Source: Mobula hypostoma | Taxonomy: Eukaryota | Direction of reading: 5' to 3' | Length of the DNA stretch: 64,000 nt | Assembly (NCBI RefSeq): GCF_963921235.1 | Contig: NC_086101.1 | Coordinates: 21,638,001-21,702,000, forward strand | Shown here: positions 33,223 to 59,724 of the stretch, piece after piece | Layout: the number at the start of each line of letters is the position of its first letter | How positions within the stretch are numbered: position 1 is the first letter of the stretch | The notes under the pieces: model-generated | What the model saw: the letters and a program-made list of their open reading frames with translations, nothing else | What the model was told of the DNA's origin: nothing | Databases searched by the model: none | Program-made: the position numbers and the translations under genes

Positions 33223-36200
33223 TTAATAATGGATGCCATCTTTTTGATGCATTGCCTTTTCAGAATGTCTTCAGTGTTGGGGAAGGGAGTGCTGTGAGAG
33301 AGCTGCCTGAGTTTTCAGCCCTCTGCATCTTTTACTGATCCTAGAAAGTGACCCTCCTCACAACAATTGAAACAGAACTTGTACAGGGAAAGAATATAGT
33401 TAAAGCAAAGTCCATTTCAATACAAGAGTTCAAAGTGGTCACAGTGATACTAAACTGTAGTGAATGGATTTTGCTGATGGCTTAAGGAACTGAATGGTTG
33501 AAGGGAAGTAGCTGTTCAAACAGTTCAATTCTTGAGAAGAGAAGAGGATTTAGAGAAGTCACCCTCAGAGTGAAGGGTCTTGCAATGGAACATTATTTAA
33601 ATTCAGTCCTCAAAAGCTAATTCAGGCAAAGATGGAAAAAAGGAAAACAATCACATGTTTCTGAGTCTTTCCTCTGGCTGAGTGTTTAGCCTTTGTACTC
33701 CAGCCCTCACTGTGAATCCTTCCAGAGATTTTCAGCTACTGTGTCTCTCAATTCTATTCTCTCTCTTTCCCCTCAGGATATTCAAGCCCTTTTGAAGAGG
33801 TAAGTAAATTTTAACTGAAATTCTGAGACCAGGTTGCTGTTGTGTCTCTAATGTATATTGGCAGTTGATTTATTATTGTTACATGAAACTTCATTTTGCA
33901 TGTTTTCTGTACAGGTTATTGCTTTACAGCAGTGTAAGAATTTTGCACAATACTGACTTGTCAATGTGGAATGGAGAGCGAGTTTGTAAACCTCTGTTGG
34001 GAATGGAGAGGGTGGAGAACAATGGGAGGGTGTGGGACAGTTGGCAGAGAAGGAGTCCGCTGGCAGTGAGTGGCATAGGTGTAGACACAACCAGCCCTGA
34101 GACACCAAGCAAGGTCATTTGATTTCAAACAATGGTTTATTGATCATTACAGAATGTCTTTCTGGTGCTTCTAGATCCCTCTCCTCTCCCTTCCCCTTTT
34201 CCCAACCAGGATTTCCCTCTCCCTGTCACCTTCCCACTCTCAGTCCACAATAGAAACCCATATCAGAATCAGGTTTATCATCACTGACATATGGCATGAA
34301 ATTTGTTTATTCTTTTGTGTCGGCAGTACAGTGTAATATATAAAATTACTACAATACTGTGCAAATGTCTTCGGCACGCTAACTATATACAGTAAATGTG
34401 CCGAAAACTGCTGCACAGTATTGTATTACAATGGAAAACAACAACAGAATGCAGAATGAAGTGTTACAGTTACAGAGAGAGTGCAGTGCAGACAGACAAT
34501 AAGCTGCAAGCCCATGACGAGGTAGATGGACGGAGAGGTCTTCAGTCCATTATATCGTACAAGCGACTGTTCAATAGTCTTATAACAGCAGGATAGAAAC
34601 TCTCCCTGAGCCTGGTGGTGAGCTTTGATGATTTTGTACCTTCTCCCAGATGGGAGGGGTGGGGAGAAGAGAGAGTGTACAGGGTGGGTGGGGTTTCTGA
34701 CGATGTTGGCTGCTTTACTGAGGCAGTGAGAAGTGCAGACAGAGTCTTTGGTAATGTGTGTCACTAATTCCTGTCCCTGACCTTGTAGGTGTGAGCTGCC
34801 GGTTTCCAGTCCTGGAGTGGTGTCTGTCGATCTTCCTGAGGATGTGGCTGAAGGAAGGTTGAGGTATCTCAAAGTGTGGAAGGAAATGAGAGCCGTGGTT
34901 TCACCAGGTACCTTTCTCTTTCTCTGTAATTCCCCTTCTCCCCACTGCCCCGCCGCCTTCTCCCCTGTAATACCTGATACTCCAAGGCTCCAGATCCACA
35001 CTCTGCATTTATCAGTTACCATCCCTCATCAGGCATTTGTTCAATGTGTGCAACATTTCTGCTTCAAACACCCACATTCCGACATAAGCAATGTCCTGAA
35101 ATGTTTCCTGACCCTCCCCAAGAACCCCCGCCTGCTGCCCCCATATGGAACAGCCTTGTTGAGACTGTTTCCCTCCCCGCCATCGCTGATCCATTGACTG
35201 GAACACTCATTTTAGGGACACCTCCTCTTTACCATTTTGTGTTGCTCCACTGTTTACCCCTCAGAGGCAGGTTACACCTGAGCCCACTGTAACTCCCAGG
35301 CAGTGTTTCCTCAGACAATCCACTGGTTGTCCCTTGTGGTGCAGCCCAGTGAAAACCTTCAGGACATTTGAAGCCCAACTCAGCACATCCATCACATTTA
35401 TCAGCCAACACTGGAGCATGCAAACATCGTCACTGATCCACACACACAATCATGGATGATCATCAGTCTCAATACCTTGGTCCTGCTCTCTCCTAATAGA
35501 CCATAAGACATAGGAGCAGAATAAGGCCACTCGGCCCATCAGGTCTGTTCCACCATCCCTCATCTCTCAGATTACCCCCGATACATTTCATATCTAGAGA
35601 TTGATCCACCTCCATCCTTCATAAATTCTGTGACTTAAACAGAACTGGCTTCTGTGAAAAGAGAATTCCTGAGGTTCATCTCCCTCCGAGGGAAGAAATT
35701 TCTCCTCCTCTCAAATCCGAAGGCTTTGTCCCTTATTCTGACACTAACCTGTAGTTTCAAGTAGTGATACCCTCTGATATGTGGTGTTGAATTTGCCACA
35801 AATCAACTTGTAAGTACAGATCGTTGTTACAACCTAAAACATCAATTCACAGTTTTTCCACACTCTTTCCACAGTTCCAACCTGATCTGATGATTCCAGA
35901 ATTCTCTGTTCTTATTTCAAATTTCCAGCATCAGCATTTTTCGATTTTTATTTGAGCACAGATTTTGTCACCCAGTCCTGGTTATTCACAGAGTCGTGGA
36001 GTTCTACTGTATAGAAGCAAGCCTTCAGCCCACTCTGGCCATCTACTGTACACTAATCCCACATGCCCACATTCGACTCATATCCCTCAGTGCCTGGCCT
36101 TTTCACATGTCTGTCTAAATGTCTCTTAAACCTGGCAGTTGTATCTGATCCCACCACTTCCTCTGGGAGAATGTTCCAGATAGCAAGCACTCTCTGTGTA

Positions 36201-36659
36201 AAGCACTTACCCCCACAGATCACCTTTAAATCTCCATCCTCTCCCCTTAAACCTCCACCCTCTTGTTTTTGATCGCTCTACCATGGGAAATGCTGCCTGT
36301 ACTGATACATTTCTGTTTTGGGTTCACACCTCCAGCATCTGCAGTTGAAATAATAAAATTCCACTCAGTCCTGGCCCTTCACGTGCTGCTGTGTCACTGG
36401 GAATGGAGCTGTCATGGCTTGTCCTGTTTAGCTTTTAAAAAGAGCACTGCAGCCACATAAAACATCATAGAATACAGTCAGCTGGGCAGAGAAATGGGAT
36501 TGAACTGCCCTGTAACAAATAACTCACTGTGACATTGTACAGTGTTAAATAGGACAGAGGGAGCAGTGGGGATTGAAATCTCCTCCAGGGTCTCCACACT
36601 TCCTGGGCTGAGGGAGGAGACGATGGTCATCACTGTCAGCTCAGATCCTGGCAGTTCCA

Positions 36660-37328
36660 AGCAACACACACAAAATGCTGGAGGAACTCAGCAGGCCTGG
36701 CACCATCAAGGGAGAAAAGTACAGTTGACGTTTCGGGCTGAGAACTTTCGACAGGACTGGAGAAAAAATAGACGAGGAGTAGATTTAAAAGGCGGTGGAG
36801 GGGAGAGAGAAACACAAGGTGATAGGTGAAACCTGGAGAGGGAGGGATGAATTAAATAGCTGGGAAGTTGATTGGTGAAAGAGATACCGGGCTGGGGAGG
36901 GGTGACCGATAGGAGAGGACAGAAGGCCATGGAAGAAAGAAAAGGCGGAGGAGCACCGGGGTGGGGGGGGTGATGGGCAGGCAAGGAGATAAGTTGAGAG
37001 GGGGAAAAGGGGATGAGGAATGGTGAAGGAGAGGGTTGGGGTGCATTACTGGAAGTTTGAGAAATCAATGTTCATGCCATCAGGTTGGAGTTACCCAGAC
37101 TGAATATAAGGTGTTGTTCCTCCAGCCAGAGTGTGGTCTCATCGAGACAGTCGAGGGAGAACCACTGGGTGATCCCACTTCTTCTAGCGGATGGAGCCCA
37201 TGTGCGCAGTGTAATGGTCTCCCAATCTACGTCAGGTCTCACTGATATACAGGAGACCACATGGGGAGCACTGGACACGGTGTATAAACCCAACAGACTC
37301 ACAGGTGAAGTGTCATCTCAGCTGGAAG
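36660..37328 (-). mobile_element. Penelope-like element 3' fragment (GIY-YIG end)
   Basis: LEEQHLIFSLG motif; TSD GTTCCA; same insertion in gene C (58503-59158); empty site in gene B (~16186). Confidence 0.8.
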
Positions 37329-37367
37329 GTTCCATCTGGTTTTCTCACTGTAACTGTTTTGTTTCAG

Positions 37368-37894
37368 TGCCAGAGCAGCTAACACTGGACCTGGATACAG
37401 CTCACAATGATCTCGTCCTCTCTCCGGATCTGATGAGTGTGCAGTACGGGACCACCGATCAAAATCATCAGGATCACCCGAGAAGATTTGTAGAAGATTT
37501 GTGTGTTTTGAGTTCACAGAGTTTCATGTCTGGGAGGCACTACTGGGAGGTGTATGTTGGATATAAGATTAGCTGGGTTGTGGGTGTCTGCACAGAGTCT
37601 GTAAACAGGAATGGAAGCATCTCCTACACACCGGAACAGGGACAGTGGGTTATTGATGTCTCTTCTAATTCAGTGAAGATACCAAATGTCATCTCCCATC
37701 TGGAAATAAAACTTCGAAAACTGGGGGTTTACCTGGATTACGAGCGGGGCCAGGTGTCATTTTACAATGCTGACAATATGTGTCACATCCACACTTACAC
37801 AGACAGCTTCACTGAGAAACTTTATCTCATCTTAAATCCATATACTAACAAAGCATGCGAAAACCCTGAACCACTCACACTGCTCACCAGTTAA
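37368..37894 (+). CDS. Copy D exon 6: intact PRY-SPRY
   Basis: TTTCAG|TG acceptor; SGRHYWEV, LGVYLDYERGQVSFYN; open to TAA. Confidence 0.75.
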
Positions 37895-39401
37895 CACAGT
37901 GGGACACGTTCTCCGAGGTCTCAGACTTCTCTGGACCCACTGAGCAGATCTCACTGCACCGATTCTCTGAAACACAACCAGAAAAATCGGAGCACTCAGC
38001 AGTGGGGGAAACATAGTTAATACTTCAGGTCCAGACCAGCACGTGAGAACTGATTCTCTGCCATTGCTACTGACAGGTGAGGCTGTTCATATTGACGTCT
38101 AATCTGTAAATTAGTCTCGGTGTCTCCTTCCCAGCTCTCTCACACTCTCTCCTACCGACTGCAGTTCAGGTGCACATTGTGTTAGAATGAAGTGGACTGT
38201 TCTCTGGAATTGTGATATCTGATTCTAGCAATCAGTGTGAATATGTGCAGATATTCTCTGTGTAATAAACATTTGACCTGCCGAGTGAACTGACAGTGTG
38301 TCTGAGCTGGTTACATTGGGGAAACAGTGAACGGAATGGAAACAAAATGGGGGATGGAGGTTCGGGCTCATAGCTAGAGCAATGACAGGGAAGCTGTTGC
38401 CTCTCAAGCTTTTGGGGAGATTGCTGCCTAGTTCTGAAAGAGACAAGCCCTCGATCGTTAACTTCTCTCCATAGTGTCACTGATAGGCAAAGAGTCTGGT
38501 CCAATAAAACAGAGATCCTTAAAGCCCAGTGAAACTAAGGTGGAACTCAGAAAGTCCGTGAAAAGGGTTTGAACATGTCATTAATCTTTATTGATGACCT
38601 CAGCAGTATTCAGAGTGTTCCACACATCCAGTACGTCGTGTGTGATGAAATGTACTGGAAATGCAGTCCCAGGATGAGGTTTAGTTTTGTCAAAGTCAAG
38701 GTAGTTTATTGTCACATACACAAGTACATGTCTGCACAGGTGCAATGATAAACCCGAGGCAGCAACACAGGCACACGGTATCATAGAAACAGCTTTCACA
38801 AGGGAAACTAATCAAGCATAAATTATGCACAGTATTTACAGGAGGAACACAATATGAAGACAAGAAAAACAAAGTCCATTTTGGTGCAAATTGATGGAAG
38901 GGGTGAGGTTTTGCTAATCTGGAGTGATTAGTGTTGTGCAGGTTGGTTTAACAACTGACTGGTTGAAGGAAAGTAACTGTTCTTGTACCTGGTGGTGTGG
39001 GAATTCAGGTCTCTGTACCTCCTGTCTGATGGTAGGTGCAAGAAGATGACTTGGACAGTCGGGATCGTCAGTGACAGATTTTGCCTTCTTGAGGCAGTGT
39101 CTCATGTAAATACGACCAAAGTGGGGTGGGGTGTGTCAGTGATGTATTGGACAGGGTCCAGTACTCTGCAACTTCCCACATTCCTGCATGTTTGAATTGC
39201 TGTACCAGACCATAATGCAACCTGTCAGGATACTTACAGCAGGACATTTGTAGAAGTTTGTTAAACTGTTTCATGACAATCTGAACCTCCTAATAAAGTA
39301 AAGTCACTGACTCACCTTCCTTGTGATTGTATTTATGTTCTGAGCCTAGAATAAATCATTTCATATGTTAACACACAGGAATTTGAAGTTGTCTATTTGA
39401 A

Positions 39402-39967
39402 GGATATCTATCTACGGCCTCCTCTATTGTAAAGATGAAGCCACACTCAGGTTGGAGGAACAACACCTTATATTCCATCTGGGTAGCCTCCAACCTGATG
39501 GCATGAGCATTGACTTTTCAAACTTCTGTTAATGCCCCACCTCCCCCTCGTACCCCATCAGTTATTTATTTATTTATATACACACATTCTTTTTCTCTCT
39601 CTCCTTTTTCTCCCTCTGTTCCTCTCACTATACCCCTTGCCAATCCGCTAGGCTTCCCCCCTCCCCCTTTCTTTCTCCCTAGGCCTCCTGTCCCATGATC
39701 CTCTCATATCCCTTTTGCCAATCAACTGTCCAGCTCTTGGCTCCATCCCTCCCCCTCCTGTCTTCTCCTATCATATCGGATCTCCCCCTCCCCTCCCACT
39801 TTCAAATCTCTTACAAGCTCTTCTTTCAGTTAGTCCTGACAAAGGGTCTCGGCCCGAAACATCAACTGGACCTCTTCCTAGAGATGCTGCCTGGCCTGCT
39901 GCGTTCAGCGGCAACTTTTATGTGTGTTGCTTGAAATTCCAGCATCTGCAGAATTCCTCGTGTTTGC
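39402..39967 (+). mobile_element. Penelope-like element 3' fragment
   Basis: GLLYCKDEATLRLEEQHLIFHLGSLQPDGM; CT-rich UTR; decayed hammerhead motif at 39832-39867. Confidence 0.8.
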
Positions 39968-41035: not shown

Positions 41036-41070
41036 AATATGATTCTATATCAATTTAAAAAAGAAAACAA

Positions 41071-42285: not shown

Positions 42286-43067
42286 TGTCATTGTCTGGTC
42301 CGTGAACTCCGCATTCCGGTTCACGGTCCGGTCCGTGGACTCAGGACTCCGGCTCTTCCAGCTGTCCCTTGATTGGTTGAGTTAATAATAGGCATCTGAT
42401 TCCCATCTTGGGGCTTGGAATCTAAGTAGCCTTGGGGTTGAGTGTGGGTTGCTGGTTTGTCTTGTTAGTCCCCTTTGGAGCAATCTGCTGATGGAAGGCT
42501 AGTGAAACCATTTGTGATCTCTCGGCCTGGTTGAAGGACCACTGCTTCATGGAGCCTTGTTGCCACTCATCGGAGCAGTCATTGTGGTATGGATTTGGCT
42601 GTTTCTGTAGCCAGCCAAGGTTGCTGGCTGGCCCAAGTCTGAGAGCCACCCTGGATTGAGCTCTTTTTCTGTCCTTGCCTCTGTTGGGTAAGCCAGGCCG
42701 TATTTGCTGTTACCCTGTGGTTGGTTCTGTCCCTCCCTGTCCCTTGCCTCTGTCGGGTAAGCAGGCCATTTGGTGTTACCCTGCAGTTGGGTCCGACCCT
42801 CCCAGTTTTTGCCTCTGCGGGGTGAAGTTCCGCGTCCTGCCCAGGAGAAGCTCCCAGAAGCCCAGCCTCAAGGATCCCACAGCCAGGCTCCCAGAACCCC
42901 AGCCTCGAGGATCCCGCAGCAGGGCTCCCAGAACCCCAGCCTCGAGGATCCCGCACTAGAGTAGGGACCTGACTAGACTAGGGACCTGACGGATACAGAC
43001 AAGTCCTGTTCCTTGTACTTAATGTGTCTTGCATTTAGGTCCGTTCCCAGCGCCCCCCATTGTGACA
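42286..43067 (+). mobile_element. Solo LTR (same family as 11881-13097) just upstream of gene C
   Basis: TGTCA...TGACA; shared 5' CCGCATTCCRGTTCACGGTCCGGTCC and 3' GTCTTGCATTYRGGTC; absent from gene B promoter (~27455); TSD not recognisable. Confidence 0.78.
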
Positions 43068-43167
43068 ACTCGGTAAAATGGTCTGATCTGTGTGAAGAGT
43101 CTGCAAGACAGGCTCGGTACTTGTGGTAAAATAAACCAGTAGCAATTCCAAGGCTGCAGCCTCTCAG

Positions 43168-43195
43168 AGGTCACATGGGGTCAAAAACAGGAAGT
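43168..43195 (+). promoter_or_regulatory. Gene C proximal promoter: DR4 + ETS motif
   Basis: AGGTCA catg GGGTCA, then ACAGGAAGT. Confidence 0.5.
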
Positions 43196-43253: not shown

Positions 43254-43655
43254 ATGGCTTCTGCAAACCTGGTCCAGGAATTAACGTGTCCCATTTGTCT
43301 GGAGGTGTTCACGGATCCGGTCTCTCTGGGGTGCGGACATCACTTCTGTGCAACGTGCATCTCTCAGGTTTGGGAGAGGGTCTCGGGGAATGTCTCCTGT
43401 CCTCAGTGCCGGCAGGTGTTCGCCCAGAGGAACACCAGGCCCGCTCACATCCTGAGCAACGTCGCAGAGAAGGTCAGGCAGCTGAGGGTGGGGGCGGCCG
43501 AGCGGAGGAAGGAGTTTGTCTGTCGGGAGCACGATGAGAAGCTGAAACTGTTCTGTCAGGAGGAGCAGATGATGGTCTGCTTGGTGTGTGGCCTGTCTGC
43601 GCAGCACAAGATGCACAATGTCATCCCGATAAAGGAGGCAGCCCAGGCGCACAAG
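43254..43655 (+). CDS. Gene C exon 1 (RING + B-box2)
   Basis: CPIC..CGHHFCATC..CPQC; CREH..C..C..C..H..H; AAG|GTGCGA. Confidence 0.93.
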
Positions 43656-46600: not shown

Positions 46601-49600
46601 ATCCCAGCCTGCAACATAGTCCAGGGATCCACTATTCTATATATAGACCACCCTGAACCTATTGATTAGATTCCAGTCTGTAACTCACCCCTGGATATCC
46701 CAGTCATGATAAAGAGACTCAACCTGAAACCTTGACTATTCTTTTGCCTCTATAGATGCTGACTAATCTTCCATCATTTTGAATGTCTAAGACGTTGCCT
46801 TTTATTGTCTATGTCCAACTCTTTATTAGTCCACCCCACTTGCATCACCTCACACTTCCAAAGATTAAATTCCAATGCCACTGCTTTGCCTCATTTCCCA
46901 ACAGATCAATGTCATCCTGTAGGCTATGACTGTTCTCCACTCTATCAACACAAGTATTTTCATGTTAACTGGAAACTTACAAATCATATCTTGTACACTC
47001 CTATCCAAAATGATCTGCAGAACAAAACAGTAGGAGTCCCAACAGTGATATTTGTAAGGCATCACAGGTCAAAAATATCTAATCACTAAAACAACACAAT
47101 CTGCTTCCTATTGCCAAGCTAAGTCTATAGATACAATTTGCCACCTCACCCCATATCCTACGGTGTAACCTTTCCAAACATCCTCCCATGTGGAATCTTG
47201 TCACTTTACTGAAGTCCCAAAGGACAACTTGAACTGTCCTCTTCACTGCATGTTGTTCTCTCTTCGATTCCAGAATGGGGATCAATCCCAGAGATCCAGT
47301 CAGATACTTGGGATTGGATTTTGGTCAATTATTCTGTCTATGATTGTTTATTCTGACCCCACTTCAATCAGCGCCCATTTTTTACTTTTAAAAAAAAAAG
47401 CAACCCTGACCCCAGTGTAAATAACCACTCCAAGCAGCACCAAATGTGTTATTTAGAAAATAAATCATTCAAATGCATGAATTATATTTGGCCAGTGACT
47501 CTCTGCTAACCTCACTCTAACTCAGGACCAGGTTGATGGACGGAGCTGTGAGATCAGGGCTGAATTTGAGAAGATGCACCAGTTCCTGCGTGAGAGGCAA
47601 CAGCAGATGGAAGCAGAGCTGCAGAGAGAAGCGGACAAAATCCTAACACAACTGGAAAACAACTTAAAGAGAACCGTCGATGAAATCTCTTCACTTAAAG
47701 CAGTGATACAAGGTGTAAAAGTGAGATTGGAAATTGACGATCCCCATGGGCTCCTCAAGGTACAGGATGAGTCACTTTCTTGTCTGGGGGATCCAAACTG
47801 TCATAAATACCTGTGAGTGAATTTAATTATATGGGCAACTAGGGTTAATACTGGTTTCCTGAATGCAGTCAGTTCAATAGAAACTCAGAAACGTTCAGAG
47901 AATAACCAGCGGTGGGTTCACACCCTGCCCTTGCCATCCTGTCCCTGGGTTTGACCCCTGTGTGATTGCTGGAATGGAGATCATTCTCTGAATGTGGAAA
48001 TCCCAGAGCAATTGCTTGAATCATCACCAGGTGGCGCCGTCAGCACCATGGGGGTGAGGATTGATTGAGTCCAAATAAATACCATGGGGGGGGGCGCGGG
48101 GTGGCATGGTAGCATAGCGATGACCGTGACGCGATTACATCTCAAGGTGTTGGAGTTCAGAGTTGAGTTCCAGTGTCCTCTGTAAGAAAGAAAGTTTGTA
48201 CTCCTTCCCATGTGCATGTGGGTTTCCTCCGACAGTTCAAAGACGTATCAGTTAGTGGGCTGGTTTAGACTGGGTTAAAGTTGTTGGGCTACTCGGTGGG
48301 ATGGCCCATCGGGCTGGAACCTCCTGTTCACACTGTATGTCTAAATAAATAAGTGTGGAAATTGTTCTGGGAATGGGCTGTCCTGAATCACAATGGCAAC
48401 CCCGTGTTTCCTGTGTCTGCACAGGCACAGATGATGTCATTCCTCCAAATACTCCTTTCCCAAAACCGGTCCCACCTACCTCTCCCTTGTGTAACAACCA
48501 ACTCTGTATTTGCCCCAGCTGCTGCTGATCAATTCACCACCAATGCAGTCTCACATCATCCACCTTTCTCCCCCTTCCCTCATCTCCTTCCCCTCCCCAT
48601 CCTCCCCTGTCCCTTTTTCTTCTCCCTCTCTGTGCTTCCCTCTTCCCTAACACACTCTCTGCCCATTCTTTCCCCTCCACTGCATCCCACTACCCTGCAT
48701 TTCAACCTCCCACATTTGTCCCCAGTTGTCCCATTCCAGGCCTGGTCCCAGTCCCTCCCCACTCTGCACTCCCACCCAACCACAGACCCTGTGCTAGTCC
48801 CCATTCCCCAGTGTGGTGCATCACTGCATCAGGACCACGAGAGAGAGAGAGAGCTGGAGAGATGCCTCACTGACAGAGACACTCCACCCTCCAGTGTTTT
48901 GTTTTGTTTTAATAATGGATGCCATCTTTTTGATACATTGCCTTTTAAAGAAGTCCTCAATACTGGGGAGGCAAGCTCCCATGATAGAACTGACTGAGTC
49001 TGCAACCTTCTGCAGCCTTTTCTGATCCTAGAAAGCGGCCCCTCCTCACAACATAATTGAAACATAAATTATACACAACTTTTATAAGGAAGAATATAAT
49101 TAAAACAAAGTTCATTTTAGTGCAAGTGATCAAAGTGGTCACAGTGATGATAAACTGTCGTGATTTGGGTTTTGCTGATTTCAGCTGAATGGCTGAAGGG
49201 AAGTAGCTGTTCAAACAGTTCTGTATTTGAGAAGAGAAGAAGGTATTGGAGGACGTAGAGAGGTAACCTCAGAGTGAAGGGCTTTGCTGTGGAAAACAAT
49301 CAAATTAGTTCCTGAGTCTTTCCTCTGGTTGAGTGTCTAGCCTTCATACTCCAACCCTTCCAGAGAGTTTCAAGGACAGTTTCACTCAATCCTATTCTCT
49401 CTCTTTCCCCTCAGGATATTCAAGCCCTTTTGAAGAGGTGAGTAAGTTTTAGCTGAAGTTCTGACACCGGGTGCTGTTGTGTCTCTAACGCTCAGTTTCT
49501 TGACCGAGGTTCCGTGAAAGGTTGCTAGGGGTTCCACAAGAGATCATGTAAAAAAAAACTTTGTTTTTTGAACTAAGTACAACGTGTGATGCGAGCACTC

Positions 49601-52600
49601 ACAGTGGTGGGCAGTGACCGAGCAGACCCGTTCACAATCTCGTTAGAGGTCTCTCAGCCCAGTATGGGAATGCACTGCCGGGCCATTTTTATTTGCTTGA
49701 GTGCATTCTCAATTTTTACCGTGAGGTAGGGGAGGTCATTTGTAACTGGTGAGCACTGTATTACACGGAGGGGAGGACGGTAGGCTGATAATTGGTGAGC
49801 ATTGTAGTGCATGGATGGTAGTATGGTAGGCTGATAACTGGTGAACATTGTATTTCAGAGGGGAGGCTGGTAGTCTGTTGAGTGTGAAGTGCATTTTCCA
49901 AGCATTGAATAGACTCGCCCAACTTGGGCTGTGACGTCAGCCTCTCCCTCCTGAATTACCTCCCACACCCTCCCCTGACACACCACCGACTGACTGATGG
50001 GAGCAAACAAAGTACCAGTGTATAGAAAGTAAGAGAAATTTTCATTCGGGATGGCCCAGTGTGGCGATTTTTGAAGTGGAGGTATGAGATGGAAGAGGAG
50101 GATTCTAGCCTAGGCCTACGGACAATTCTGATAAGGTTAATGGTGAAGAATTTCAATCTTCTGAGTCATTTCACTGCACTAGTGCAACAACGGACACAAA
50201 TAAAGGTCCATCTTTACATTAAAACTACCTATCAATGGGTTTTACACGGACTGGTGATCCTAGTTGTCTGATTCCATTGTGCCTAGTCTGGGCAAACAAC
50301 TTACAAATGTAGCAATGGCTCCAGCAAAATTGAAAAGACAGTTAACGACAAATCACAACTGTATGAAACGTAAAAGTGCTGATTATTTTAAATGACTATT
50401 GGAATCAAAGAGATTCCAGCTTTTGAATATAATGTCACAGTCAGTAAAATAATATAGGAAGCAACTTATTTACGCAAACAACAGGAATTCTGCAGATGCT
50501 GGAAATTCAAGCAACATACATCAAAGTTGCTGGTGAACGCAGCAGGCCAGGCAGCATCTATAGGAAGAGGCGCAGTCGACGTTTCAGGCCGAGACCCTTC
50601 ATCGAAGGGTCTCGGCCTGAAACGTCGACTGCGCCTCTTCCTATAGATGCTGCCTGGCCTGCTGCGTTCACCAGCAACTTTGATGTAAGCAACTTATTTA
50701 GTAGCTTTAAGACCAGTTCACTCGAGAATGTTTGAAAAACTGTATGAAAACCTCAACAAGGAGCAAACCAGTCTCCTGTTACATGTGGAAATCCAGTGGC
50801 TTCACAGAGGAAGTTCTCAACAGGGTGTTTAAGCTGAAAGCTGAATTGCAGGAGTGCTTTCAAGAAAATAATAGGCCAGATTTTGCTGAGTGCTTTGAAG
50901 ATGAAGAACTGCTCCATAAACTAGCCAACTTAACAGAAATTCTTCATCATATGAACCAGTTAAACAAGTCTCTGCAAGGCACTGGAGAAAATGTTTTGAC
51001 TTCAAGTGACAAGAATCTTAGATTTAAAGGGAAACTGAATCTTTGGAAAAATCATGTTGCAAAAACCTTGAAATGTTTCCACAGCTGCTTGTGCTTGAGT
51101 GTGAGGAAGGATATCAGAAAGTCACGAGTCTTTTTGAAAACCACTTGGATAACTGCAGAACAAAACTTTCTTTCTTTTTTAATCTTTTTATTAATTTCAA
51201 AATATAGAAACAAAACATAGCAATAATACAAATAGTAGGAGATGTATTGTTACACTTAAAAAAAGTAATTGTAAAATCAAATAGTGTAAATTAACAAAGC
51301 TCCCAATCATGTAGAACTAACAATGGATAATACAAAGCAAAAAAAAAACTGGAAAAAAACATGAAAAAGAAAAAAAAAACAAAACGAAAAAAAAAAGCAA
51401 ACCCCATCCCCAAAGAAAAACAAAATTAATCAACTAAACTAAAAGACTTGGACAAAACTAACAACTTAAAAATGGAAAAGAAGAAAACCTTTGTGTCGAC
51501 GACTCCATTCCCCTCCAACAACAGTACAGAGAGATAAAACAAGTTTGGAAATGATCAAATTACATCAAATGAAAATGCTGAATGAATGGCCTCCAAGTTT
51601 TTTCAAATTTAATGGAGGAGTCATAAACCGCACTTCTAATTTTCTGCAAATTCAACCACACCATAGTTTGTGAAAACCAATGAAATACAGTACGAGGGTT
51701 AATCTCTTTCCAATTCAACAAAATGGACCTTCTAGCTATTAAAGTAAGAAATGCAATCATCCTTTGTGATGAAGAGGTTAAATTATTTAAGTCTATCATT
51801 GGTAGTCGAAAGATAGCAGTAATTGGATGAGGTTGTAAGTCTATATTTAGGACCATTGAAATAATATCAAAAATATCTTTCCAATATTTCTCCAACAAGG
51901 GACATGACCAAAACATGTGGGTTAAAGAAGCTATCTCGGAATGGCATCTGTCACATATTGGATTAATATAAGAGTAATAACAAGATAGTTTATCTTTGGA
52001 CATATGAGCCCTGTGCAGTACTTTAAACTGTATCAACCTTTGCTTAGCACATACAGAGGATGAATTCACCAACTGAAGAATTTTTTCCCATTTTTCGGTC
52101 GGTATATTAATCTCAAGTTCTCTTTCCCAGTCAGCTTTGATTTTATTAGAAGCATCAGGACATAGATTCATAATTATATTATATATAATTGCTACTACAC
52201 TTTTCTGAGGGAGATTTAAATCTAAGATTTTTTCCAAAGTGTCCATTGGATATAGGTGTGGAAAATTAGGGGAGACAGTAATTAAAAAGTTTCTAATCTG
52301 TAGATATCTGAAAAAATGAGATCTGGGTAAGTTATATTTATTAGAGAGTTGATCAAAAGACATAAAACAATTATCCAAAAATAAATCGTGAAAAGATATT
52401 ATACCTTTGGTTTTCCAATCAAAGTAAGCTTGATCCATCGTGGAAGGTTGAAAAAGAAAATTTGATATAATAGGACTTGCTAGAATAAATCGATTAAACC
52501 CAAAAAATCTTCAGAATTGAAACCATATACGTAAAGTATGCTTAACTATTGGGTTGTTCATTTGTTTATATGATTTAAAAGAAGTAAAAGGAAGTAAAGT

Positions 52601-55600
52601 TCCTAAAACCGAACCCAAGGAAAACCCTTGTAATGAATTAGATTCAAGATTTACCCAATAAGGGTTTAAAGATACGTCCAAATCTCGTAACCAAAATTTT
52701 AAATATCGAATATTAATTGCCCAGTAATACAACCTAAAATTCGGGAGGGCGAGCCCCCCCACCTCCTTTTTAGATTTCTGTAGATACCTTTTACCTAACC
52801 TAGGATTTTTATTCTGCCAAATATATGAGGAAATTTTTGAATCTACATTATCAAAAAAAGATTTTGGGATAAAAATTGGAACCGATTGGAATATATACAA
52901 AAATTTGGGCAAAATGATCATCTTAATAGCATTAATCTGACCAATCAAAGACAAAGAGATTGGTGACCATTTAGTAAATAAAAGTTTAATCTGATCAATT
53001 AAAGGTAAAAAATTAGCTTTAAATAAATCTTTATATTTTTTTGTAATTGTTATCCCTAAATATATAAATGAATCAGTAACCAATTTAAATGGTAACCATC
53101 CATAAATAGGTACATGCTTATTTAAAGGGAATAATTCACTCTTTTAAGATTCAATTTGTAACCAGAGAAGTTACTAAATTGAGCTAACAGATCTAAGATA
53201 GCAGGAATTGACTTCTCCGGGTTAGAGATGTATAACAACAAATCATCTGCATATAATGATAATTTATGTATTTCATTTCCACGGGTAATACCAACAATAT
53301 TTGGCGTGTCACGAATAGCAATTGCTAAAGGTTCAAGAGCAATATTGAATAGTAAAGGACTAAGAGGGCAACCTTGCCTAGTACCACGAAAAAGACGAGA
53401 AAAAGGAGATCTATAATTATTTGTACAAACCGAGGCTACCGGGGAGTAATATAACAATTTAATCCAAGATATAAATGTCAAATTAAAATTAAATTTCTCA
53501 AGAACATTAAATAAATAAGGCCATTCAACTCTGTTAAAGGCTTTCTCAGCATCTAATGAGATAATACATTCCAGGGTAATAGGTGAGGGGTTATAAACAA
53601 TATTCATTAACCTCCTAATATTAAAGGATGAATAACGATTTTTAATAAATCCGGTTTGATCCATGGAGATAATTTGAGGTAACACCTTCTCCAACCTAGT
53701 TACTAGAATTTTTGAAAAAATTTTAGAGTCTACATTCAGAAGAGATATCGGTCTGTATGATGCACAATCAGTAGGATCTTTATTCTTTTTAAGAATTAAG
53801 GAAATAGAGGCTTCCTAAAACAATTGTGGTAATTTACCTAAACTGATTGCTTCCTTGAATATTCTAGACAACTTAGAAGAAAGAATGGAGGAAAAAAAAT
53901 TAAAAATTTCCACTGTAAACCCATCTGGACCGGGTGCTTTACTGGAATTCAATGAAGAGATTGCAGTTATTATTTCTTCCTCTGAAATGGAAGTTTCTAA
54001 TGATAAGCAATCTTCGGGTGATAGTTTCGGAAAACTCAATTTACTTAAAAAATCATGCATGAAATTAGAATCATGAGGAAAATCAGAGTGATATTAAGAG
54101 GTATAAAATTCTTGAAAGGTTTGGTTTATCCCAGCATGATCAACTGTGAAAGTATCATCCTGTTTGTGAATCTTAGTAACTTGACGTTTAACCGAATCAA
54201 ATTTCAATTGGTTAGCCAGTAATTTACCCAATTTATCGCTATAAATATAAAAATCACTTCTAGTTCTCATTAATTGATTTTTGATTGAGGATGTTAATAA
54301 TAAGCTATGTTCCAACTTAACAGAAATTCTTCATCATATGAACCAATTAAATAAGTCTCTGCAAAGCACTGGAGAAAACGTTTTGACTTCAAGTGACAAG
54401 AATCTTAGATTTAAAAAGAAACTGAATCTTTGGAAAAATCATGTTGCAAAAACCTTGAAATGTTTCCACAGCTGCTTGTGCTTGAGTGTGAGGAAGGATA
54501 TCAGAAAGTCACGAGTCTTTTTGAAAACCACCTAGAATAACTGCAGAACAAAATTGAACAGTATTTTTCCTCCCTTTCAACACAAGTGCATGACTAGATG
54601 AGAGACCGTTTCTCTGAATCTTCTGCTCAGCCTGAGAACTTGACTTTGAGAGAAGAGGAAGAACTTTGTGAGATGCAGTCTGATCGTGCACTCAAGATGA
54701 GATTTACTGACCTGCCCCGGGACAAGTTCTGGATTTCTGTGAAAGAAAAGTTTCAAGCCATTCATTGGAAAGCAATGAACATTTTGTTGCAGTTTTCAAC
54801 TTCTTACATGTGTCAGCAAGCTTTTTCTTGTTTAACAAGCATCACGAGTAAGGAAAGACATTGTCTCATTTCAGTTGAAGGTGAAATTCATGTGTGCTGA
54901 TCTCAAGTTCGACCCAGAACTGAGACATTTATTATGTTTGCCTTATGAGTTGTTTAAAATTTATGCAAGAGAAAGAAAGAGTAATTTCAAGAAAGGTAAG
55001 CTAAGCTTAACTGTCTGTATTTTTTCTCCCCCAAGAAAGGTCAACTAAAAATTTATTTTCTACTCGGAAGAGCATTGTACACAGTACTATGTTAACATGG
55101 AGTGGAGAGCGAGTTTGTAAGTGTGGTGGGAGCAAAGAATGTTGGGAGTGGAGAGTGGAGAGTCATGGGAAGTGTGTGGCACAGGTGAGACAGGAGGAGT
55201 GCTGAGGGATGGTGACACGGGTGCAGACGTACCCACCCCTGAGACACCAAGCAAGGTCATTTGATTTCAAACAATTCCTTTATTGATCATTACAGAACGT
55301 CTCTCTGGTGCATCCTGCTCTGTCCCCTCTCCCTTCCCCTTGTCCCAACCAGGATTCCCCTCTCCCTGCCCCCTTCCCACTGTCAGTCCACAATAGAAAC
55401 CCATACCAGAATCGGGTTTATCATCACTCAGATATGCCCTGAAATTTGTTATGTTTTTCCTTTGCGGCTGCAGTACAGTGCAATACAGAAAATTACTACA
55501 GTACTGTGCAAATGTCTTAGGGACTCTAGCTGTGTAAATGTGTCTTAAAGTTTTGCACAGTATTGTATTACAGTTGAAAACAGCAAAAGAGTGCAGAATG

Positions 55601-58600
55601 AAGTGTTACAGTTACAGAGAGAGTGCAGTGCAGACAGACAATAAGCTGCAAGGCCGTGACGTGGTAGATGGATGGTGAGGTCTTCAGTCCATTATATCAT
55701 ACAAGGGGGCTGTTCAATAGTCTTACAACAGCAGGATAGAAACTCTCCCTAAGCCTGGTGATCTGATGATTTTGTACCTTCTCTCTGATGGGAGGAGTGG
55801 GGAAAAGGGAGAGTGGGGAAAAGGGAGAGTGTACAGGGTGGGAGGGGTTTCTGATGATGTTGGCTGTTTACTGAGGCTGTGAGAAGTGCAGACAGAGTCT
55901 TTGATAATGTGTGTCACTAATTTCTGTCCCTGACCTTGTAGGTGTGAGTTGCCGGTTTCCAGTCCTGGAGTGGTGTCTGTCGATCTTCCTGAGGATGTGG
56001 CTGAAGGAAGACTGAGGTATCTCAAAGTGTGGAAGGAAATGAGAGCCGTGGTTTCACCAGGTATCTTTCTCTTTCTCTGTAATTCCCCTTCTCCCCACTG
56101 CCCCGCCTTCTCTACTGTAATTCCAGAAACTCCAGATGCCACCCTCTGCATTTATTAGTTACCATTCCTTATGACTTCAGGAGGAGCCCCCCAATACTCC
56201 CCCCACTCACTATACTCAACAGTATTGTGTCTGCTGTGGAGACCTTCAGGTTTCTGGGTGTCACAATCTCCCAGGACCTGAAGTGGACACCCAACAGGGA
56301 CACTCTTATCAAAAAGGCTCAGCAGAGGTTGTATTTCCTACGTCAACTCAGGAAGTACAACCTGCCTCAGGAGCTGCTGATTCAATTCTATTCAGGAATA
56401 ACCCAGTCTGTTCTCTGTTCATCCATCACTGTCTGGTTTGGATCAGCTACCAAACAAGACAAGAATAGACTCCAAAAAACCGTCAGGGCTGCGGAAAGGA
56501 TTATTGGTGTGAAGCTGCCCTCGATCCAGGACTTATACGCATCTAGAGTCAGGAAGCGAGCGAGCAGCATCATTGTAGACCCATCACACCCTGGACATCA
56601 CCTGTTCCAACTCCTTCCTTCTGGTAGGCGCTTTGGATCACTGTATGCCAGGACAAATAGGTACAAGAACAGTTTCTTTCCGTATGCCATCAGTCTTATG
56701 AACACTTGAATTTTAGTCTATTATAGACCAAGTCCACCTGTACATACACAGGTATACCTCATTGTATATAGCTCACGACCATTCGCATTATTGTTTTGTT
56801 TGTTTTTTAATTCTCTACAGCGAGAGCTCAGAGAAACCTGCGTCAAATTCCCTATATGTGTCCACATATTTGGCGATATTAAAGGATTCCGATTCTGATT
56901 ATCAGGCATGTGTTCATTGTGTACAACATTTCTGCTTCTGACACACACAACCTGACATATGCACTGTCTTGTAATGCATCCAGAACCTCCCCAACACCCT
57001 TCCCTACCTCATCCCTAGTTGAGGCAGCTTCAATTCCCTCCATCACTGATTGATGGATTGGAACACTCAGTTTAGGGATATCTCACCTTTGGCAATACAT
57101 ATTGCTCAAAGTTTTGCCTCCAAAGAGGCAGCTTACAGGTGAACCCATTGCATCTCCCAGCCAGTGTTTCCTAGGATAATCCCCAGGTTGTCCCTTGTTG
57201 TGCAGCCCCGTGGAAGCCTTCAGCACATTTGAAGCCCAACTCAGCACATCCATCACATTTATCAGCCAACACTGGAGCATGCAAACATCGTCACTGATCC
57301 ACACACACAATCATGGATGATCATCAGTCTCAATACCTTGGTCCTGCTCTCTCCTAATAGACCATAAGACATAGGAGCAGAATAAGGCCACTCGGCCCAT
57401 CAGGTCTGTTCCACCATCCCTCATCTCTCAGATTACCCCCGATACATTTCATATCTAGAGATTGATCCACCTCCATCCTTCATAAATTCTGTGACTTAAA
57501 CAGAATTGGCTTCTGCGAGAAGAGAATTCCTGAGGTTCAACTCACTCCGAGGGAAGAAATTTCTCCTCCTTTCAAATCCGAACGCTTTGCCGCTTATTCT
57601 GACACTGACCTGTAGTTTCAAGTAGTGATACCCTTGATATCTGGTGCTGAATTTGCCACAAATCAACTTCTAAGTACAAATCGTTGTTACAACCTAAAAT
57701 ATCAATTCACAGTTTTTCCACACTCTTTTCACAGTTCCAACCTGATCTGATGATTCCAGAATTCTCTGTTCTTATTTCAAATTTCCAGCATCTGCATTTT
57801 TTGACTTTTTTTTTCCCAGTCCTGGTTATTCACAGAGTCGTAGAGTTCTACTGTACAGAAGCAAGCCTTCAGCCCACTCTGGCCATCTACTGTACACTAA
57901 TCCCACATGCCCACATTTGGCTCATATCCCTCTGTGCCTGACCTTTTCACATGTCTGTCTAAATGTCTCTTAAACCTGGCAATTGTATCTGATTCCACCA
58001 CTTCCTCTGGGAGAATGTTCCAGATAGCAAGCAATCTCTGTTTAAAGCACTTACCCCACATATCACCTTTAAATCTCCTTCCCCTCCCCTTAAACCTCCA
58101 CCCTCTTGTTTTTGATCACTCTACCATGGGAAATGCTGCCTGTACTGATACATTTCTGTTTTGGGTTCACATCTCCAGCATCTGCAGTTTAAATAATAAA
58201 ATTCCACTGGGCCCTGGCCCCTCACGGGCTGCTGTGTCACTGGGAATGGAGCTGTCATGGCTTGTCCTGTTTAGCTTTTAAAAAGAGAACTGCAGCCACA
58301 TAAAACATCATAGAATACAGTCAGCTGGGCAGAGGAAGGGGATTGAACTACTCTGTAACAAATAACTCACTGTGACATTGTACAGTGTAAAGTAGGATGG
58401 AGGGATCAATGGGGATTGAAATCTCCTCCAGGGGCCCCACACTTCCTAGGCTGAGGGAGGAGACGATGGTCATCACTGTCAGCTCAGATCCTGGCACTTC
58501 CAAGCAACACACACAAAATGCTGGAGGAACTCAACAGGCCAGGCAGCATCTATGGAAAAAAAAGTACAGTTGACATTTCGGGCTGAGACCCTTCGGCAGG

Positions 58601-59724
58601 ACTGGAGAAAAAATAGACGAGGAGTAGATTTAAAAGGTGGGGGAGGGGAGAGAGAAACACAAGGTGATAGGTGAAACCGAGAGAGGGAGGGACGAATTAA
58701 ATAGCTGGGAAGTTGATTGGTGAAAGAGATACCGGGCTGGGGAAGGATGAACGATGAGAGAGGACAGAAGGCCATGGAAGAAAGAGAAGGAGGAGGAGCA
58801 CCAGAGGGGGTGATGGGCAGGCAAGGAGATAAGTTGAGAGGGGGAAAAGAGGATGGGGAATGGTGAAGGAGAGGGTTGGGTTGCATTACTGGAAGTTTGA
58901 GAAATCAATGTTCATGCCATCAGGTTGGTGTTACCCAGACTGAATATAAGGTGTTGTTCCTCCAGCCAGAGTGTGGTCTCATTGAGACAGTCGAGGGAGA
59001 ACCACTGGGTGATCCCACTTTGTCTGGCCAATGGAGCCTAAGTGCTCAGTGTAATGGTCTCCCAATCTATGTCGGTATACAGGAGGCCACATGGGGAGCA
59101 CTGGACACGGTGTATAAACCCAACAGACTCACAGGTGAAGTGTCATCTCAGCTGGAAGGTTCCATCTGGTTTTCTCACTGTAACTGTTTTGTTTCAGTGC
59201 CAGAGCGGCTAACACTGGACCTGGATACAGCTCACAATGATCTCGTCCTCTCTCAGGATCTGATGAGTGTGCAGTACGTGACCACCGATCAAAATCGTCA
59301 GGATCACCCGAGAAGATTTGTAGAAGATTTGTGTGTTTTGAGTTCACAGAGTTTCATGTCTGGGAGGCACTACTGGGAGGTGTATGTTGGATATAAGATT
59401 AGCTGGGTTGTGGGTGTCTGCACAGAGTCTGTAAACAGGAATGGAAGCATCTCCTACACACCGGAACAGGGACAGTGGGTTATTGATGTCTCTTCTAATT
59501 CAGTGAAGATACCAAATGTCATCTCCCATCTGGAAATAAAACTCCGAAAACTGGGGGTTTACCTGGATTATGAGCGTGGCCAAGTGTCATTTTACAATGC
59601 TGACAATATGTGTCACCTCCACACTTACACAGACAGTTTCACTGAAAAACTTTGTCTCATCTTAAATCCATGTGATAACAAATCAGGCAAAAACTCTGAA
59701 CCACTCACACTGCTCACCACTTAA
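43254..59724 (+). CDS. TRIM gene C, complete RING/B-box2/coiled-coil/PRY-SPRY E3 ligase, 466 aa
   Basis: join(43254..43655,44640..44735,47526..47759,49415..49437,55942..56060,59198..59724) = 1401 nt, frame open, all GT-AG. Confidence 0.92.
44640..44735 (+). CDS. Gene C exon 2 (96 nt)
   Basis: TTTCAG|GAA...AAG|GTGAGG. Confidence 0.92.
45265..45973 (-). mobile_element. Young Penelope-like element 3' fragment in gene C intron 2
   Basis: YIGETRRRLGDRFAEH...LEEQHLIFRLGSLQPDGMNIDF (GIY-YIG); TATCAGAC duplicated at flanks; absent from gene B (~25247). Confidence 0.85.
45332..45367 (-). ncRNA. Minimal type I hammerhead ribozyme motif (Penelope-associated)
   Basis: AGTC CTGACGA AGGGTCTCGGCCT GAAA C GTC GACT: intact CUGANGA/GAAA core, stem I AGTC/GACT, GUC cleavage triplet. 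Confidence 0.7.
47526..47759 (+). CDS. Gene C exon 3 (234 nt)
   Basis: CTCAG|GAC...AAG|GTACAG; coiled coil. Confidence 0.92.
49415..49437 (+). CDS. Gene C exon 4 (23 nt)
   Basis: CCTCAG|GATATTCAAGCCCTTTTGAAGAG|GTGAGT. Confidence 0.88.
50473..50686. mobile_element. Inverted (palindromic) Penelope-type mini-insertion
   Basis: 84-bp perfect arms at 50517-50600 and 50604-50687; 14-bp TSD AAGCAACTTATTTA. Confidence 0.88.
51166..54311 (-). mobile_element. 5'-truncated L1 LINE (ORF2 RT + C-terminal zinc knuckle), broken ORF
   Basis: KAPGPDGF, QTGFI, SLDAEKAF, RGTRQGCPLSP, LYADD, GGLALPN, CDRC..HMFWSC; AATAAA + (AAAG)n tail at 51166. Confidence 0.93.
55942..56060 (+). CDS. Gene C exon 5 (119 nt)
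   Basis: TTGTAG|G...CCAG|GTATCT. Confidence 0.88.
56173..56898 (+). mobile_element. Rex1/Babar 3' fragment in gene C intron 5
   Basis: DFRR..FRFLGVTIS..KAQQRLYFLRQL..HPGHHLFQLLPSGRR..NSFFP; (GATTCT)-like tail; absent in B and D. Confidence 0.88.
58503..59158 (-). mobile_element. Penelope-like 3' fragment shared with copy D
   Basis: Same position and TSD (CTTCCA/GTTCCA) as 36660-37328. Confidence 0.8.
59198..59724 (+). CDS. Gene C exon 6: PRY-SPRY
   Basis: TTTCAG|TG; SGRHYWEV; LGVYLDYERGQVSFYN; TAA. Confidence 0.93.

What the first reader, a model, noticed from the sequence alone, without database searches (positions are those of the whole stretch)
33225..59724. Orphan PRY-SPRY cassette (D) appears to exchange ligand-binding loops with intact gene C by gene conversion
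Seen: C and D exon 6 are identical over 246 nt (D 37468-37713 = C 59298-59543), the stretch carrying the loops that differ most from gene B. The last ~180 nt carry ~16 differences, and C's exon ends look B-like (ERLTL, SQDL, YVTT, KLCLILNPC, TLLTT). Established: B30.2 variable loops set target specificity in TRIM5/TRIM21. Inference: the headless but intact D cassette acts as a donor (or recipient) reservoir that reshuffles TRIM recognition surfaces, reminiscent of pseudogene-templated diversification.
Basis: partly seen in the sequence, partly recalled or inferred. Interest (0 to 1): 0.8.

Follow-up and report, generated by a model that had tools for sequence, protein, structure and literature searches.

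The report
Gene conversion between ray TRIM copies
In a devil-ray cluster of immune-type TRIM genes, a headless partial gene copy and its intact neighbour carry freshly copy-pasted identical stretches, which is the ordinary way such gene families evolve and gives no sign of a special diversity-generating device.

Summary
D 37468-37713 equals C 59298-59543 exactly (246 nt). The rest of exon 6 carries 20 differences: 4 before the tract and 16 in the last 181 nt.

The window is Mobula hypostoma. It holds six-exon RING/B-box/coiled-coil/PRY-SPRY genes annotated "zinc-binding protein A33-like". D is a partial duplicate with intact exons 4-6, which NCBI models as a 182-aa PRY/SPRY protein.

The identity is a mosaic, not uniform divergence.
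- A second perfect tract of 281 nt lies in intron 5.
- Background C-D divergence is about 5-7%, rising to 12-22% in intron 4.
- No permutation reached 246 nt (0 of 200,000).
- A test on polymorphic sites gave 33 consecutive C=D sites (0 of 20,000).
- Synonymous sites are also identical.
- DNA word depth over part of the tract is about twice that of the unique flanks.

Recent germline interlocus gene conversion is therefore well supported, and protein-level mosaicism runs through the whole family.

- The "reservoir" or pseudogene-templated idea has no evidence. There is one fragment, the direction is unresolved (weak hints favour C to D), and no D-specific exon-6 words appear in RNA.
- C's exon ends are not specially B-like; they carry family-consensus residues.
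- The tracts do not respect exon or loop boundaries.

Short-tract B30.2 conversion combined with positive selection is already described in fish and primates.

The parts
43254..59724 (+). Gene C, an intact six-exon class-IV TRIM ('zinc-binding protein A33-like', 466 aa). Exons: 43254-43655, 44640-44735, 47526-47759, 49415-49437, 55942-56060, 59198-59724.
   Evidence: Splicing these exons at GT/AG sites reproduces protein P0001 exactly. RING, B-box, PRY and SPRY Pfam hits.
33223..39391 (+). Segment D, a partial duplicate: the 3' part of intron 3, exon 4 (33777-33799), exon 5 (34789-34907), exon 6 (37368-37894) and the 3' flank. It has no exons 1-3.
   Evidence: Self-BLAST homology to C and B. 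tblastn finds only exons 5 and 6, and a peptide search finds exon 4. All splice dinucleotides are intact and the open frame is 222 codons; 34886-34907 plus 37368-37894 gives P0003, the 182-aa NCBI model.
37468..37713 (+). Exonic conversion tract in D, identical to C 59298-59543 (codons 326-407).
   Evidence: Exact identity. Permutation tests. DNA contig 37538-37692 has word depth 26 against about 11 in unique flanks.
59298..59543 (+). Exonic conversion tract in C. It covers the second half of loop 319-337 and loops 345-347, 355-359, 368-383 and 391-398 of the B30.2 model.
   Evidence: dN/dS against B is 1.81 here and 0.25-0.46 in the flanks.
35364..35644 (+). Intronic conversion tract in D (intron 5), identical to C 57225-57505. 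It contains a high-copy repeat.
   Evidence: Word depth of 66,000 or more at 35400-35599.
57225..57505 (+). Intronic conversion tract in C. Divergence on its 5' side jumps to 24-33%.
   Evidence: windowed divergence.
37257..37376 (+). 120-nt exact C=D tract across the intron 5/exon 6 junction (C 59087-59206).
   Evidence: A run of 120 or more has P = 0.025 on its own.
15628..27276 (-). Gene B, an intact paralog (465 aa, P0007), head-to-head with C. Used as the third sequence in the tests.
38061..39009 (+). About 950 bp of 3' flank present in D and B but deleted in C. This marks D as its own lineage rather than a recent copy of present-day C.
   Evidence: Contigs of a related species cover parts of it (38228-38370, 38829-38989) at about 3% divergence. 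Perfect low-depth RNA contigs lie at 38342-38733.

Best explanation
B, C and D are members of a tandem/inverted cluster of class-IV TRIM genes in Mobula hypostoma. D is an old partial duplicate (exons 4-6 plus 3' flank). It sits 21.8 kb upstream of the matching part of C, in the same orientation.

Double-strand-break repair in the germline has repeatedly used one copy as template for the other. This is non-allelic (interlocus) gene conversion with short tracts of about 120-460 bp. It left patches of 0% divergence (281 nt in intron 5; 120 and 246 nt at exon 6) inside a 5-7% background, which is itself younger than the 12-22% divergence of intron 4.

The process is blind to coding. It happens to have made the central B30.2 loops of C and D identical, while part of loop 319-337 and loop 449-460 stay different. 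The central loops show dN/dS above 1 against B, so they were shaped by selection in a functional gene. D most likely received them passively from C.

Shown: the mosaic, its significance, D's anatomy, and family-wide mosaicism. Inferred: the repair mechanism, the germline timing and the C-to-D direction.
For: - Exact tracts.
- Run-length permutation, 0 of 200,000.
- Polymorphic-site test, 0 of 20,000, which excludes a merely slow-evolving region because B differs at 33 sites inside the tract.
- Synonymous differences: none in about 52 sites of the tract, 5-6 in about 39 sites downstream, Fisher P = 0.004. All differences: 0 of 246 against 20 of 279, P = 2.5e-6.
- Heterogeneous divergence: intron 4 has all three pairs at 12-22%, most of intron 5 is about 5%, the tracts are 0%.
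- In residues 408-466, D is farther from C (9 of 59) than nearly every other paralog is, yet identical in the tract.
- Family-wide reticulation: PHI-like test P < 0.0005 on full length and 0.019 on exon 6.
- DNA word depth over 37538-37692 is 26 against about 11 in unique flanks, with no alternative letters among those listed.
- A related species, about 2.8% divergent, carries D-specific segments, so D predates that split. At that divergence 527 identical nt have P(0) = 3.5e-7, so the conversions came later.
- dN/dS between C and B is 1.81 in the tract and 0.25-0.46 outside.
- C's exon 6 is evenly 5-9% from paralog P0002 in all three segments, whereas D's flanks are 12-15% from it. This is a weak hint that the tract is native to C.
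Against: - The direction of transfer is not established. No nucleotide sequence of other paralogs or of orthologs could be fetched.
- The four differences just 5' of the tract are all nonsynonymous, with none synonymous and none in the adjacent 120 nt. Simple neutral decay after one long conversion does not predict this. It needs either patchy repair, two separate tracts, or selection.
- The DNA run used for the depth check is probably from the same individual as the assembly, so it is not independent. De Bruijn contigs cannot link across an exact 246-nt repeat.
- The table of alternative letters was truncated (40 of 106 rows shown).
Confidence: 0.8

Rival explanations
1. D is a selectively maintained donor, a 'reservoir'. 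Its cassette supplies loop variants to intact TRIM genes in the germline, or somatically as in the chicken and rabbit Ig pseudogene system.
For: - D keeps an open frame of 222 codons and all splice sites, although it is older than a species split.
- Several of D's minority residues recur in intact paralogs: Q295, Y444, Y450, T451 and P458 in M. birostris P0005, and P311 in M. hypostoma P0002.
- D also shares a 155-nt exact tract with B at exon 5.
Against: - There is one fragment, not an array.
- The intact frame is not improbable by chance. The intron 5 indel:substitution ratio of 6:98 predicts about 1.4 indels in D's diverged coding part, so P(0) is about 0.25.
- One tract is purely intronic, and the exonic ones ignore loop boundaries.
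- dN/dS above 1 in the shared tract implies the changes were selected in an expressed gene.
- No D-specific exon-6 words were found in RNA: 0.22 observed against 0.16 expected from words shared with C.
- Somatic exchange was not testable.
Confidence: 0.06
2. Both C and D received the tract from a third paralog outside the window, such as a P0002-like gene. The C=D identity would then reflect two conversions from one donor, not direct C-D exchange.
For: The cluster has at least eight members on this chromosome and shows pervasive mosaicism. P0002 is the closest other protein in the tract, with 7 of 82 differences.
Against: No listed M. hypostoma protein other than C and D carries the tract identically. 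Two independent conversions with identical end points, plus a second shared intronic tract, are less parsimonious than direct exchange.
Confidence: 0.08
3. Assembly or polishing artefact: reads of C were used to correct D, or the reverse, creating false identity.
For: The region is a recent segmental duplication. There is a 134-N gap in the cluster at 18612-18745. High-copy repeats lie inside intron 5.
Against: - C and D lie on one gap-free stretch, are only about 92% identical overall, and have dense diagnostic differences on both sides of each tract.
- Raw-read-derived contigs show about 2x word depth over part of the tract (37538-37692) and no alternative letters among those listed.
Confidence: 0.04
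4. There was no conversion. A single recent duplication was followed by uneven mutation or strong purifying selection on the tract.
For: Exon sequence is expected to be conserved. Exon 5 is nearly invariant across the family.
Against: - The tract is the most variable part of the domain across paralogs.
- Synonymous and intronic sites are identical too.
- Intron 4 and the last 59 codons of exon 6 (dS = 0.14) are far more diverged than the tracts.
- D keeps about 950 bp that C has lost.
Confidence: 0.02

Closest known systems
Short-tract gene conversion among B30.2 exons of zebrafish NLR-B30.2 and finTRIM genes (Howe et al., bioRxiv 10.1101/027151; read)
   Same: Clustered innate-immune genes have the B30.2 domain on a single exon. 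Positive selection is concentrated in surface loops. Low synonymous divergence and discordant trees are explained by conversion tracts shorter than the exon, which recombine loop variants among paralogs.
   Different: This case is a cartilaginous fish, a small family with about 8 proteins listed on the chromosome, and a pair in which one partner is a headless fragment. The evidence here is a single pair of exact tracts, not family-wide dS statistics.
Paralog conversion and turnover in primate TRIM clusters (Han et al. 2011, PMC3228819; read)
   Same: Young, segmentally duplicated TRIM genes and pseudogenes sit side by side. Neighbouring copies were made identical by a presumed conversion (A1/A2, over 6 kb). 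GARD breakpoints lie within coding exons, and there is positive selection in B30.2.
   Different: The primate example is a whole-gene conversion between intact genes. Here the tracts are a few hundred bp and involve a partial copy.
Pseudogene-to-gene interlocus conversion in humans, such as CYP21A1P/CYP21A2
   Same: A non-functional tandem duplicate tens of kb away, in direct orientation, exchanges short tracts with the functional gene through germline homologous repair.
   Different: In those cases the direction (pseudogene to gene) is demonstrated and the effect is deleterious. Here the direction is unresolved and probably the opposite.
AID-driven somatic gene conversion of chicken and rabbit Ig V genes from upstream pseudogene arrays (own knowledge)
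   Same: A promoterless upstream copy in the same region as a functional gene shares patches with it.
   Different: That system has an array of many donors and is somatic, unidirectional and tied to B-cell development. None of these features is seen or testable here.

Membership tests
Class-IV TRIM (RING, B-box2, coiled coil, PRY/SPRY) | N-terminal RING and B-box | tested here: met
   Exon 1 of genes C, B and A: zf-C3HC4_4 at 4e-13 to 1e-13 and zf-B_box at about 1e-10. D has none, so D itself is not a TRIM gene.
Class-IV TRIM (RING, B-box2, coiled coil, PRY/SPRY) | Coiled-coil exons of conserved size (96, 231-234 and 23 nt) | tested here: met
   C's exons are 402, 96, 234, 23, 119 and 527 nt and splice to P0001 exactly. 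TRIM_CC (PF25600) is recorded for several paralogs. That these sizes are conserved across the class is recalled from memory.
Class-IV TRIM (RING, B-box2, coiled coil, PRY/SPRY) | C-terminal B30.2 (PRY+SPRY) fold | tested here: met
   PRY and SPRY Pfam hits for B, C and D. PDB sequence matches to the B30.2 domains of pyrin, BTN3A1, TRIM7 and TRIM21 at 1e-35 to 1e-28. The AF2 model has pLDDT 88 and is almost entirely beta-strand (13 strands); it was not compared with solved structures.
Interlocus (non-allelic) gene conversion | Identity tract between paralogs significantly longer than background divergence allows | tested here: met
   0 of 200,000 and 0 of 20,000 permutations.
Interlocus (non-allelic) gene conversion | Tract not explained by constraint (silent and non-coding sites included) | tested here: met
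   No synonymous differences in the tract against 5-6 downstream. A 281-nt intronic tract also exists.
Interlocus (non-allelic) gene conversion | Paralogs closer to each other in the tract than to their orthologs in a sister species | tested here: inconclusive
   Only indirect. A related species' contigs on D-unique segments are 2.8% diverged, which makes 527 identical nt improbable if equally old. Orthologous C and D sequences could not be fetched.
Interlocus (non-allelic) gene conversion | Real in the DNA, not an assembly artefact | tested here: inconclusive
   Word depth is about 2x over 37538-37692 and no alternative letters are listed. However, the sample is the same as the assembly's, the contigs cannot link across the repeat, and the table was truncated.
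Pseudogene-templated diversification system (Ig type) | Array of multiple donor cassettes next to one functional gene | tested here: not met
   Only one exon 4-6 fragment lies between B and C. The other remnant (28748-31892) has no exons.
Pseudogene-templated diversification system (Ig type) | Somatic chimeric sequences in immune tissue | not testable with these tools
   Only assembled RNA contigs were available. Those laid on D's exons 5 and 6 carry mismatches to D and come from other paralogs.
Pseudogene-templated diversification system (Ig type) | Unidirectional flow from fragment to gene | tested here: inconclusive
   Protein-level comparison with P0002 weakly favours C to D. There is no nucleotide outgroup.

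The most novel reading that the evidence does not exclude
The headless exon 4-6 fragment D is kept intact because it serves the cluster. It could be a germline store of alternative B30.2 loop segments, traded by short conversion tracts with several intact TRIM neighbours: C at exon 6, B at exon 5, and the P0002/P0005 lineage at the exon ends. Alternatively it could be a separately expressed PRY/SPRY-only protein that mimics or competes with C's central recognition loops.
Probability: 0.07. Interest if true: 0.7.

Novelty: new member of a known kind. Interest (0 to 1): 0.3.

Why it matters
This is a clean, statistically strong example of recent short-tract interlocus gene conversion in an elasmobranch TRIM cluster. 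It includes the B30.2 loops that show dN/dS above 1. It extends to cartilaginous fish a pattern already described in teleost NLR-B30.2/finTRIM genes and in primate TRIMs.

In practice, trees, orthology calls and selection tests for these ray genes must be done per segment. Gene fragments such as D should be included when reconstructing the family's history. It does not reveal a new mechanism.

Tried and rejected
- Fetching DNA of the other M. hypostoma paralogs and of M. birostris orthologs failed because the sample files are too large. No nucleotide-level GARD or 3SEQ across the cluster and no ortholog polarisation were possible.
- Laying reads on D was swamped by high-copy repeats in introns 4 and 5. 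RNA contigs on D's exons carried 1 mismatch in exon 5 and 5 in 200 nt of exon 6, so they belong to other paralogs. The exon 4-5 splice joint therefore says nothing about D.
- A word search with D's exon-6 3' end found no excess of D-specific words in RNA: 0.22 against 0.16 expected from words shared with C.
- The idea that C's exon ends were converted from B was rejected. C-specific and D-specific changes are balanced (7 and 10), and the residues listed are family consensus.
- D's intact reading frame was rejected as evidence of selection, since the expected number of indels is only about 1.4.
- Other exact repeats in the window (B-C 128 and 124 nt; B-D 155, 108 and 92 nt) were considered. The intronic ones are near what about 5% divergence allows. 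The 155-nt B-D run is mostly the highly conserved exon 5, so it is only suggestive.
- Earlier scan notes and literature searches on shark or ray TRIM clusters gave nothing relevant.
Full report
**What is in the window.**
- The best protein matches are Mobula hypostoma "zinc-binding protein A33-like" proteins on a 199-Mb chromosome.
- Splicing six GT/AG-bounded exons reproduces the 466-aa protein P0001 exactly. The exons are 43254-43655, 44640-44735, 47526-47759, 49415-49437, 55942-56060 and 59198-59724. This is gene C.
- Gene C has RING and B-box in exon 1, coiled-coil exons of 96, 234 and 23 nt, and PRY/SPRY on the last exon.
- Gene B (465 aa, P0007) lies head-to-head on the minus strand, from exon 1 at 27276 to the stop at 15628.
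- A third RING/B-box exon (A, 9345-8944, minus strand) has no further exons in the window.
- The C-terminal domain matches solved B30.2 domains of pyrin, BTN3A1, TRIM7 and TRIM21. Its model has mean pLDDT 88.

**What D is.** D is more than an exon-6 cassette.
- Homology to C and B starts at 33223, inside intron 3, and runs to 39391 in the 3' flank.
- It contains exon 4 (33777-33799), exon 5 (34789-34907) and exon 6 (37368-37894). All splice dinucleotides are intact and the frame is open for 222 codons.
- No exons 1-3 lie upstream on the plus strand.
- NCBI's annotation models D as a 182-aa PRY/SPRY-only protein, P0003, starting at a Met inside exon 5. The window encodes that protein exactly.
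- D keeps about 950 bp of 3' flank (38061-39009) that B also has but C has lost.
- Contigs of a related species, about 2.8% diverged, cover D-unique segments. D is therefore an old lineage, not a fresh copy of present-day C.

**The observation.** The 246-nt identity is exact. Exon 6 has 20 C-D differences:
- 4 in the first 100 nt, all nonsynonymous;
- none in the 246-nt tract;
- 16 in the last 181 nt.

Two more exact tracts exist: 281 nt in intron 5 (35364-35644 = 57225-57505) and 120 nt across the intron 5/exon 6 junction (37257-37376 = 59087-59206).

**Is it more than chance or constraint?**
- Over 2995 aligned columns with 214 differences, none of 200,000 permutations produced a run of 246 or more. 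The null maximum was 225 and the analytic expectation 2.6e-6.
- Using only polymorphic sites, with B as third sequence, 33 consecutive sites at 59309-59538 have C=D and B different. None of 20,000 permutations reached this (null maximum 20). The tract is therefore not simply invariant sequence.
- Synonymous differences are 0 in about 52 sites inside the tract and 5-6 in about 39 sites downstream (P = 0.004). All differences are 0 of 246 against 20 of 279 (P = 2.5e-6).
- Divergence is layered. In intron 4 all three pairs are 12-22% apart. In most of intron 5 they are about 5% apart and roughly equidistant. In the tracts they are 0% apart.
- The last 59 codons have dS = 0.14 between C and D. At the protein level D is there more distant from C (9 of 59) than almost any other paralog is.

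This refutes one recent duplication with uniform divergence.

**Artefact check.**
- C and D lie on one gap-free stretch. The only N run is 18612-18745, in B's intron 4.
- Contigs built from raw DNA reads of the same species give word depth 26 over 37538-37692, against 10.5-11.7 in D-unique pieces. No alternative letters are listed in the tract. This is what two truly identical copies predict.
- The run is probably from the assembly individual, and the contigs cannot link across the repeat. The check is supportive but not decisive.

**Timing.** At the 2.8% divergence seen for the related species on D-unique pieces, 527 identical nt would have P(0) = 3.5e-7. The conversions are therefore probably younger than that species split, while D itself is older.

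**Selection and structure.**
- Between C and B, dN/dS is 1.81 in the tract and 0.25-0.46 in the flanks. dS is lower in the tract than outside, so the excess replacements are not due to greater age.
- On the model, variable positions concentrate in loops 319-337, 368-383, 391-398, 403-408 and 449-460.
- The tract covers the second half of the first loop and the central loops.
- The 13 C-D replacements sit mainly in 319-325 and 449-460. D is therefore not a copy of C's whole surface.

**Family context.**
- Twelve Mobula proteins show reticulate patterns. A PHI-like test gives P < 0.0005 on full length and 0.019 on exon 6.
- D's minority residues are not random decay. Q295, Y444, Y450, T451 and P458 recur in M. 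birostris P0005, and P311 in M. hypostoma P0002.
Polarised counts are balanced, with 10 D-specific and 7 C-specific changes.

**Direction and function.**
- The direction could not be settled, because DNA of other paralogs and orthologs was unavailable.
- Two weak arguments favour C to D. First, the replacements in the tract look positively selected, which requires an expressed gene. Second, C's exon 6 is evenly 5-9% from P0002 in all three segments, whereas D's flanks are 12-15% from it.
- D's expression is doubtful. RNA contigs laid on its exons 5 and 6 carry mismatches and belong to other paralogs.
- D-specific words of the exon-6 3' end are not enriched in RNA: 0.22 observed against 0.16 expected from words shared with C.
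- Only three perfect, low-depth contigs (depth 3-6) at 38342-38733 in one sample suggest weak transcription of its 3' region.
- D's open frame is not statistically surprising, since about 1.4 indels are expected.

**Comparison with what is known.**
- Short-tract conversion among B30.2 exons combined with positive selection on loops has been proposed explicitly for zebrafish NLR-B30.2 and finTRIM genes (10.1101/027151).
- Conversion between neighbouring TRIM paralogs, and GARD breakpoints within them, are reported for primate TRIM clusters that also contain pseudogenes (PMC3228819).
- The present case is a new, clear instance in a cartilaginous fish.
- The Ig-like "pseudogene-templated diversification" analogy fails the one defining feature that could be tested, a donor array. 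The other features were untestable.

**Verdict.**
- Observation: confirmed.
- Gene conversion: well supported (0.8).
- Reservoir function: unsupported (about 0.06-0.07).
- Class: an ordinary evolutionary process in a family where it is already known.

Noticed in passing
window 17628-17782 (B, minus strand) = 34797-34951 (D): B and D are exactly identical for 155 nt, covering most of exon 5 plus 44 nt of intron 5. C differs from D at 3 sites in exon 5. This could be a B-D conversion, or just the strong conservation of exon 5.
   Followed up: partly
window 59884 (C) against D 38061-39009 and B 14562-15461: C lacks about 950 bp of 3' flank just downstream of exon 6 that both B and D retain. Beyond the deletion, C and D are again 97% identical (59900-60100), with 18 consecutive C=D polymorphic sites.
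   Followed up: partly
window 56172-56901: A C-specific insertion of about 730 bp in intron 5 is absent from D and B. It carries a reverse-transcriptase-like ORF fragment (56227-56709).
   Followed up: no
window 28748-31892: A gene remnant in minus orientation lies between B's promoter and D. It has sequence homologous to the 3' flank of C and B, joined directly to sequence like intron 2, with no exons. Part of it may be a transposable element.
   Followed up: no
window 8944-9345 (minus strand): A third intact RING/B-box exon 1 (gene A) is 92.5% identical in protein to C's exon 1. No exons 2-6 follow it within the window. LINE-like reverse-transcriptase ORFs at 739-4229 lie where the gene body would be.
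   Followed up: no
window 18612-18745: A run of 134 N lies inside intron 4 of gene B. It is the only gap in the window.
   Followed up: no
window 34000-34400, 35400-35600, 36600-37200: Introns 4 and 5 of D contain very high-copy repeats. Word depths reach 1e4 to 1e6 in DNA runs and thousands in RNA runs. One of them lies inside the 281-nt C=D tract. The same element family occurs at 39404-39948, 45268-45791 and 58485-58996.
   Followed up: partly
window 37539-37738 (RNA contigs of runs X11 and X12): The longest RNA contig laid on this part of exon 6 has 5 mismatches to D in 200 nt. C and D differ at only one position there, so the contig comes from another paralog outside the window.
   Followed up: no
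window 12208-12609 and 42669-42821: Tandem arrays with a unit of about 64-66 nt and similar-looking consensus units lie in B's 3' flank and in C's promoter region.
   Followed up: no
window 51560-53694 (minus strand): Three consecutive long ORFs (292, 190 and 190 aa) of a LINE-type reverse transcriptase sit in an AT-rich block (GC 0.31-0.36) inside intron 4 of gene C.
   Followed up: no
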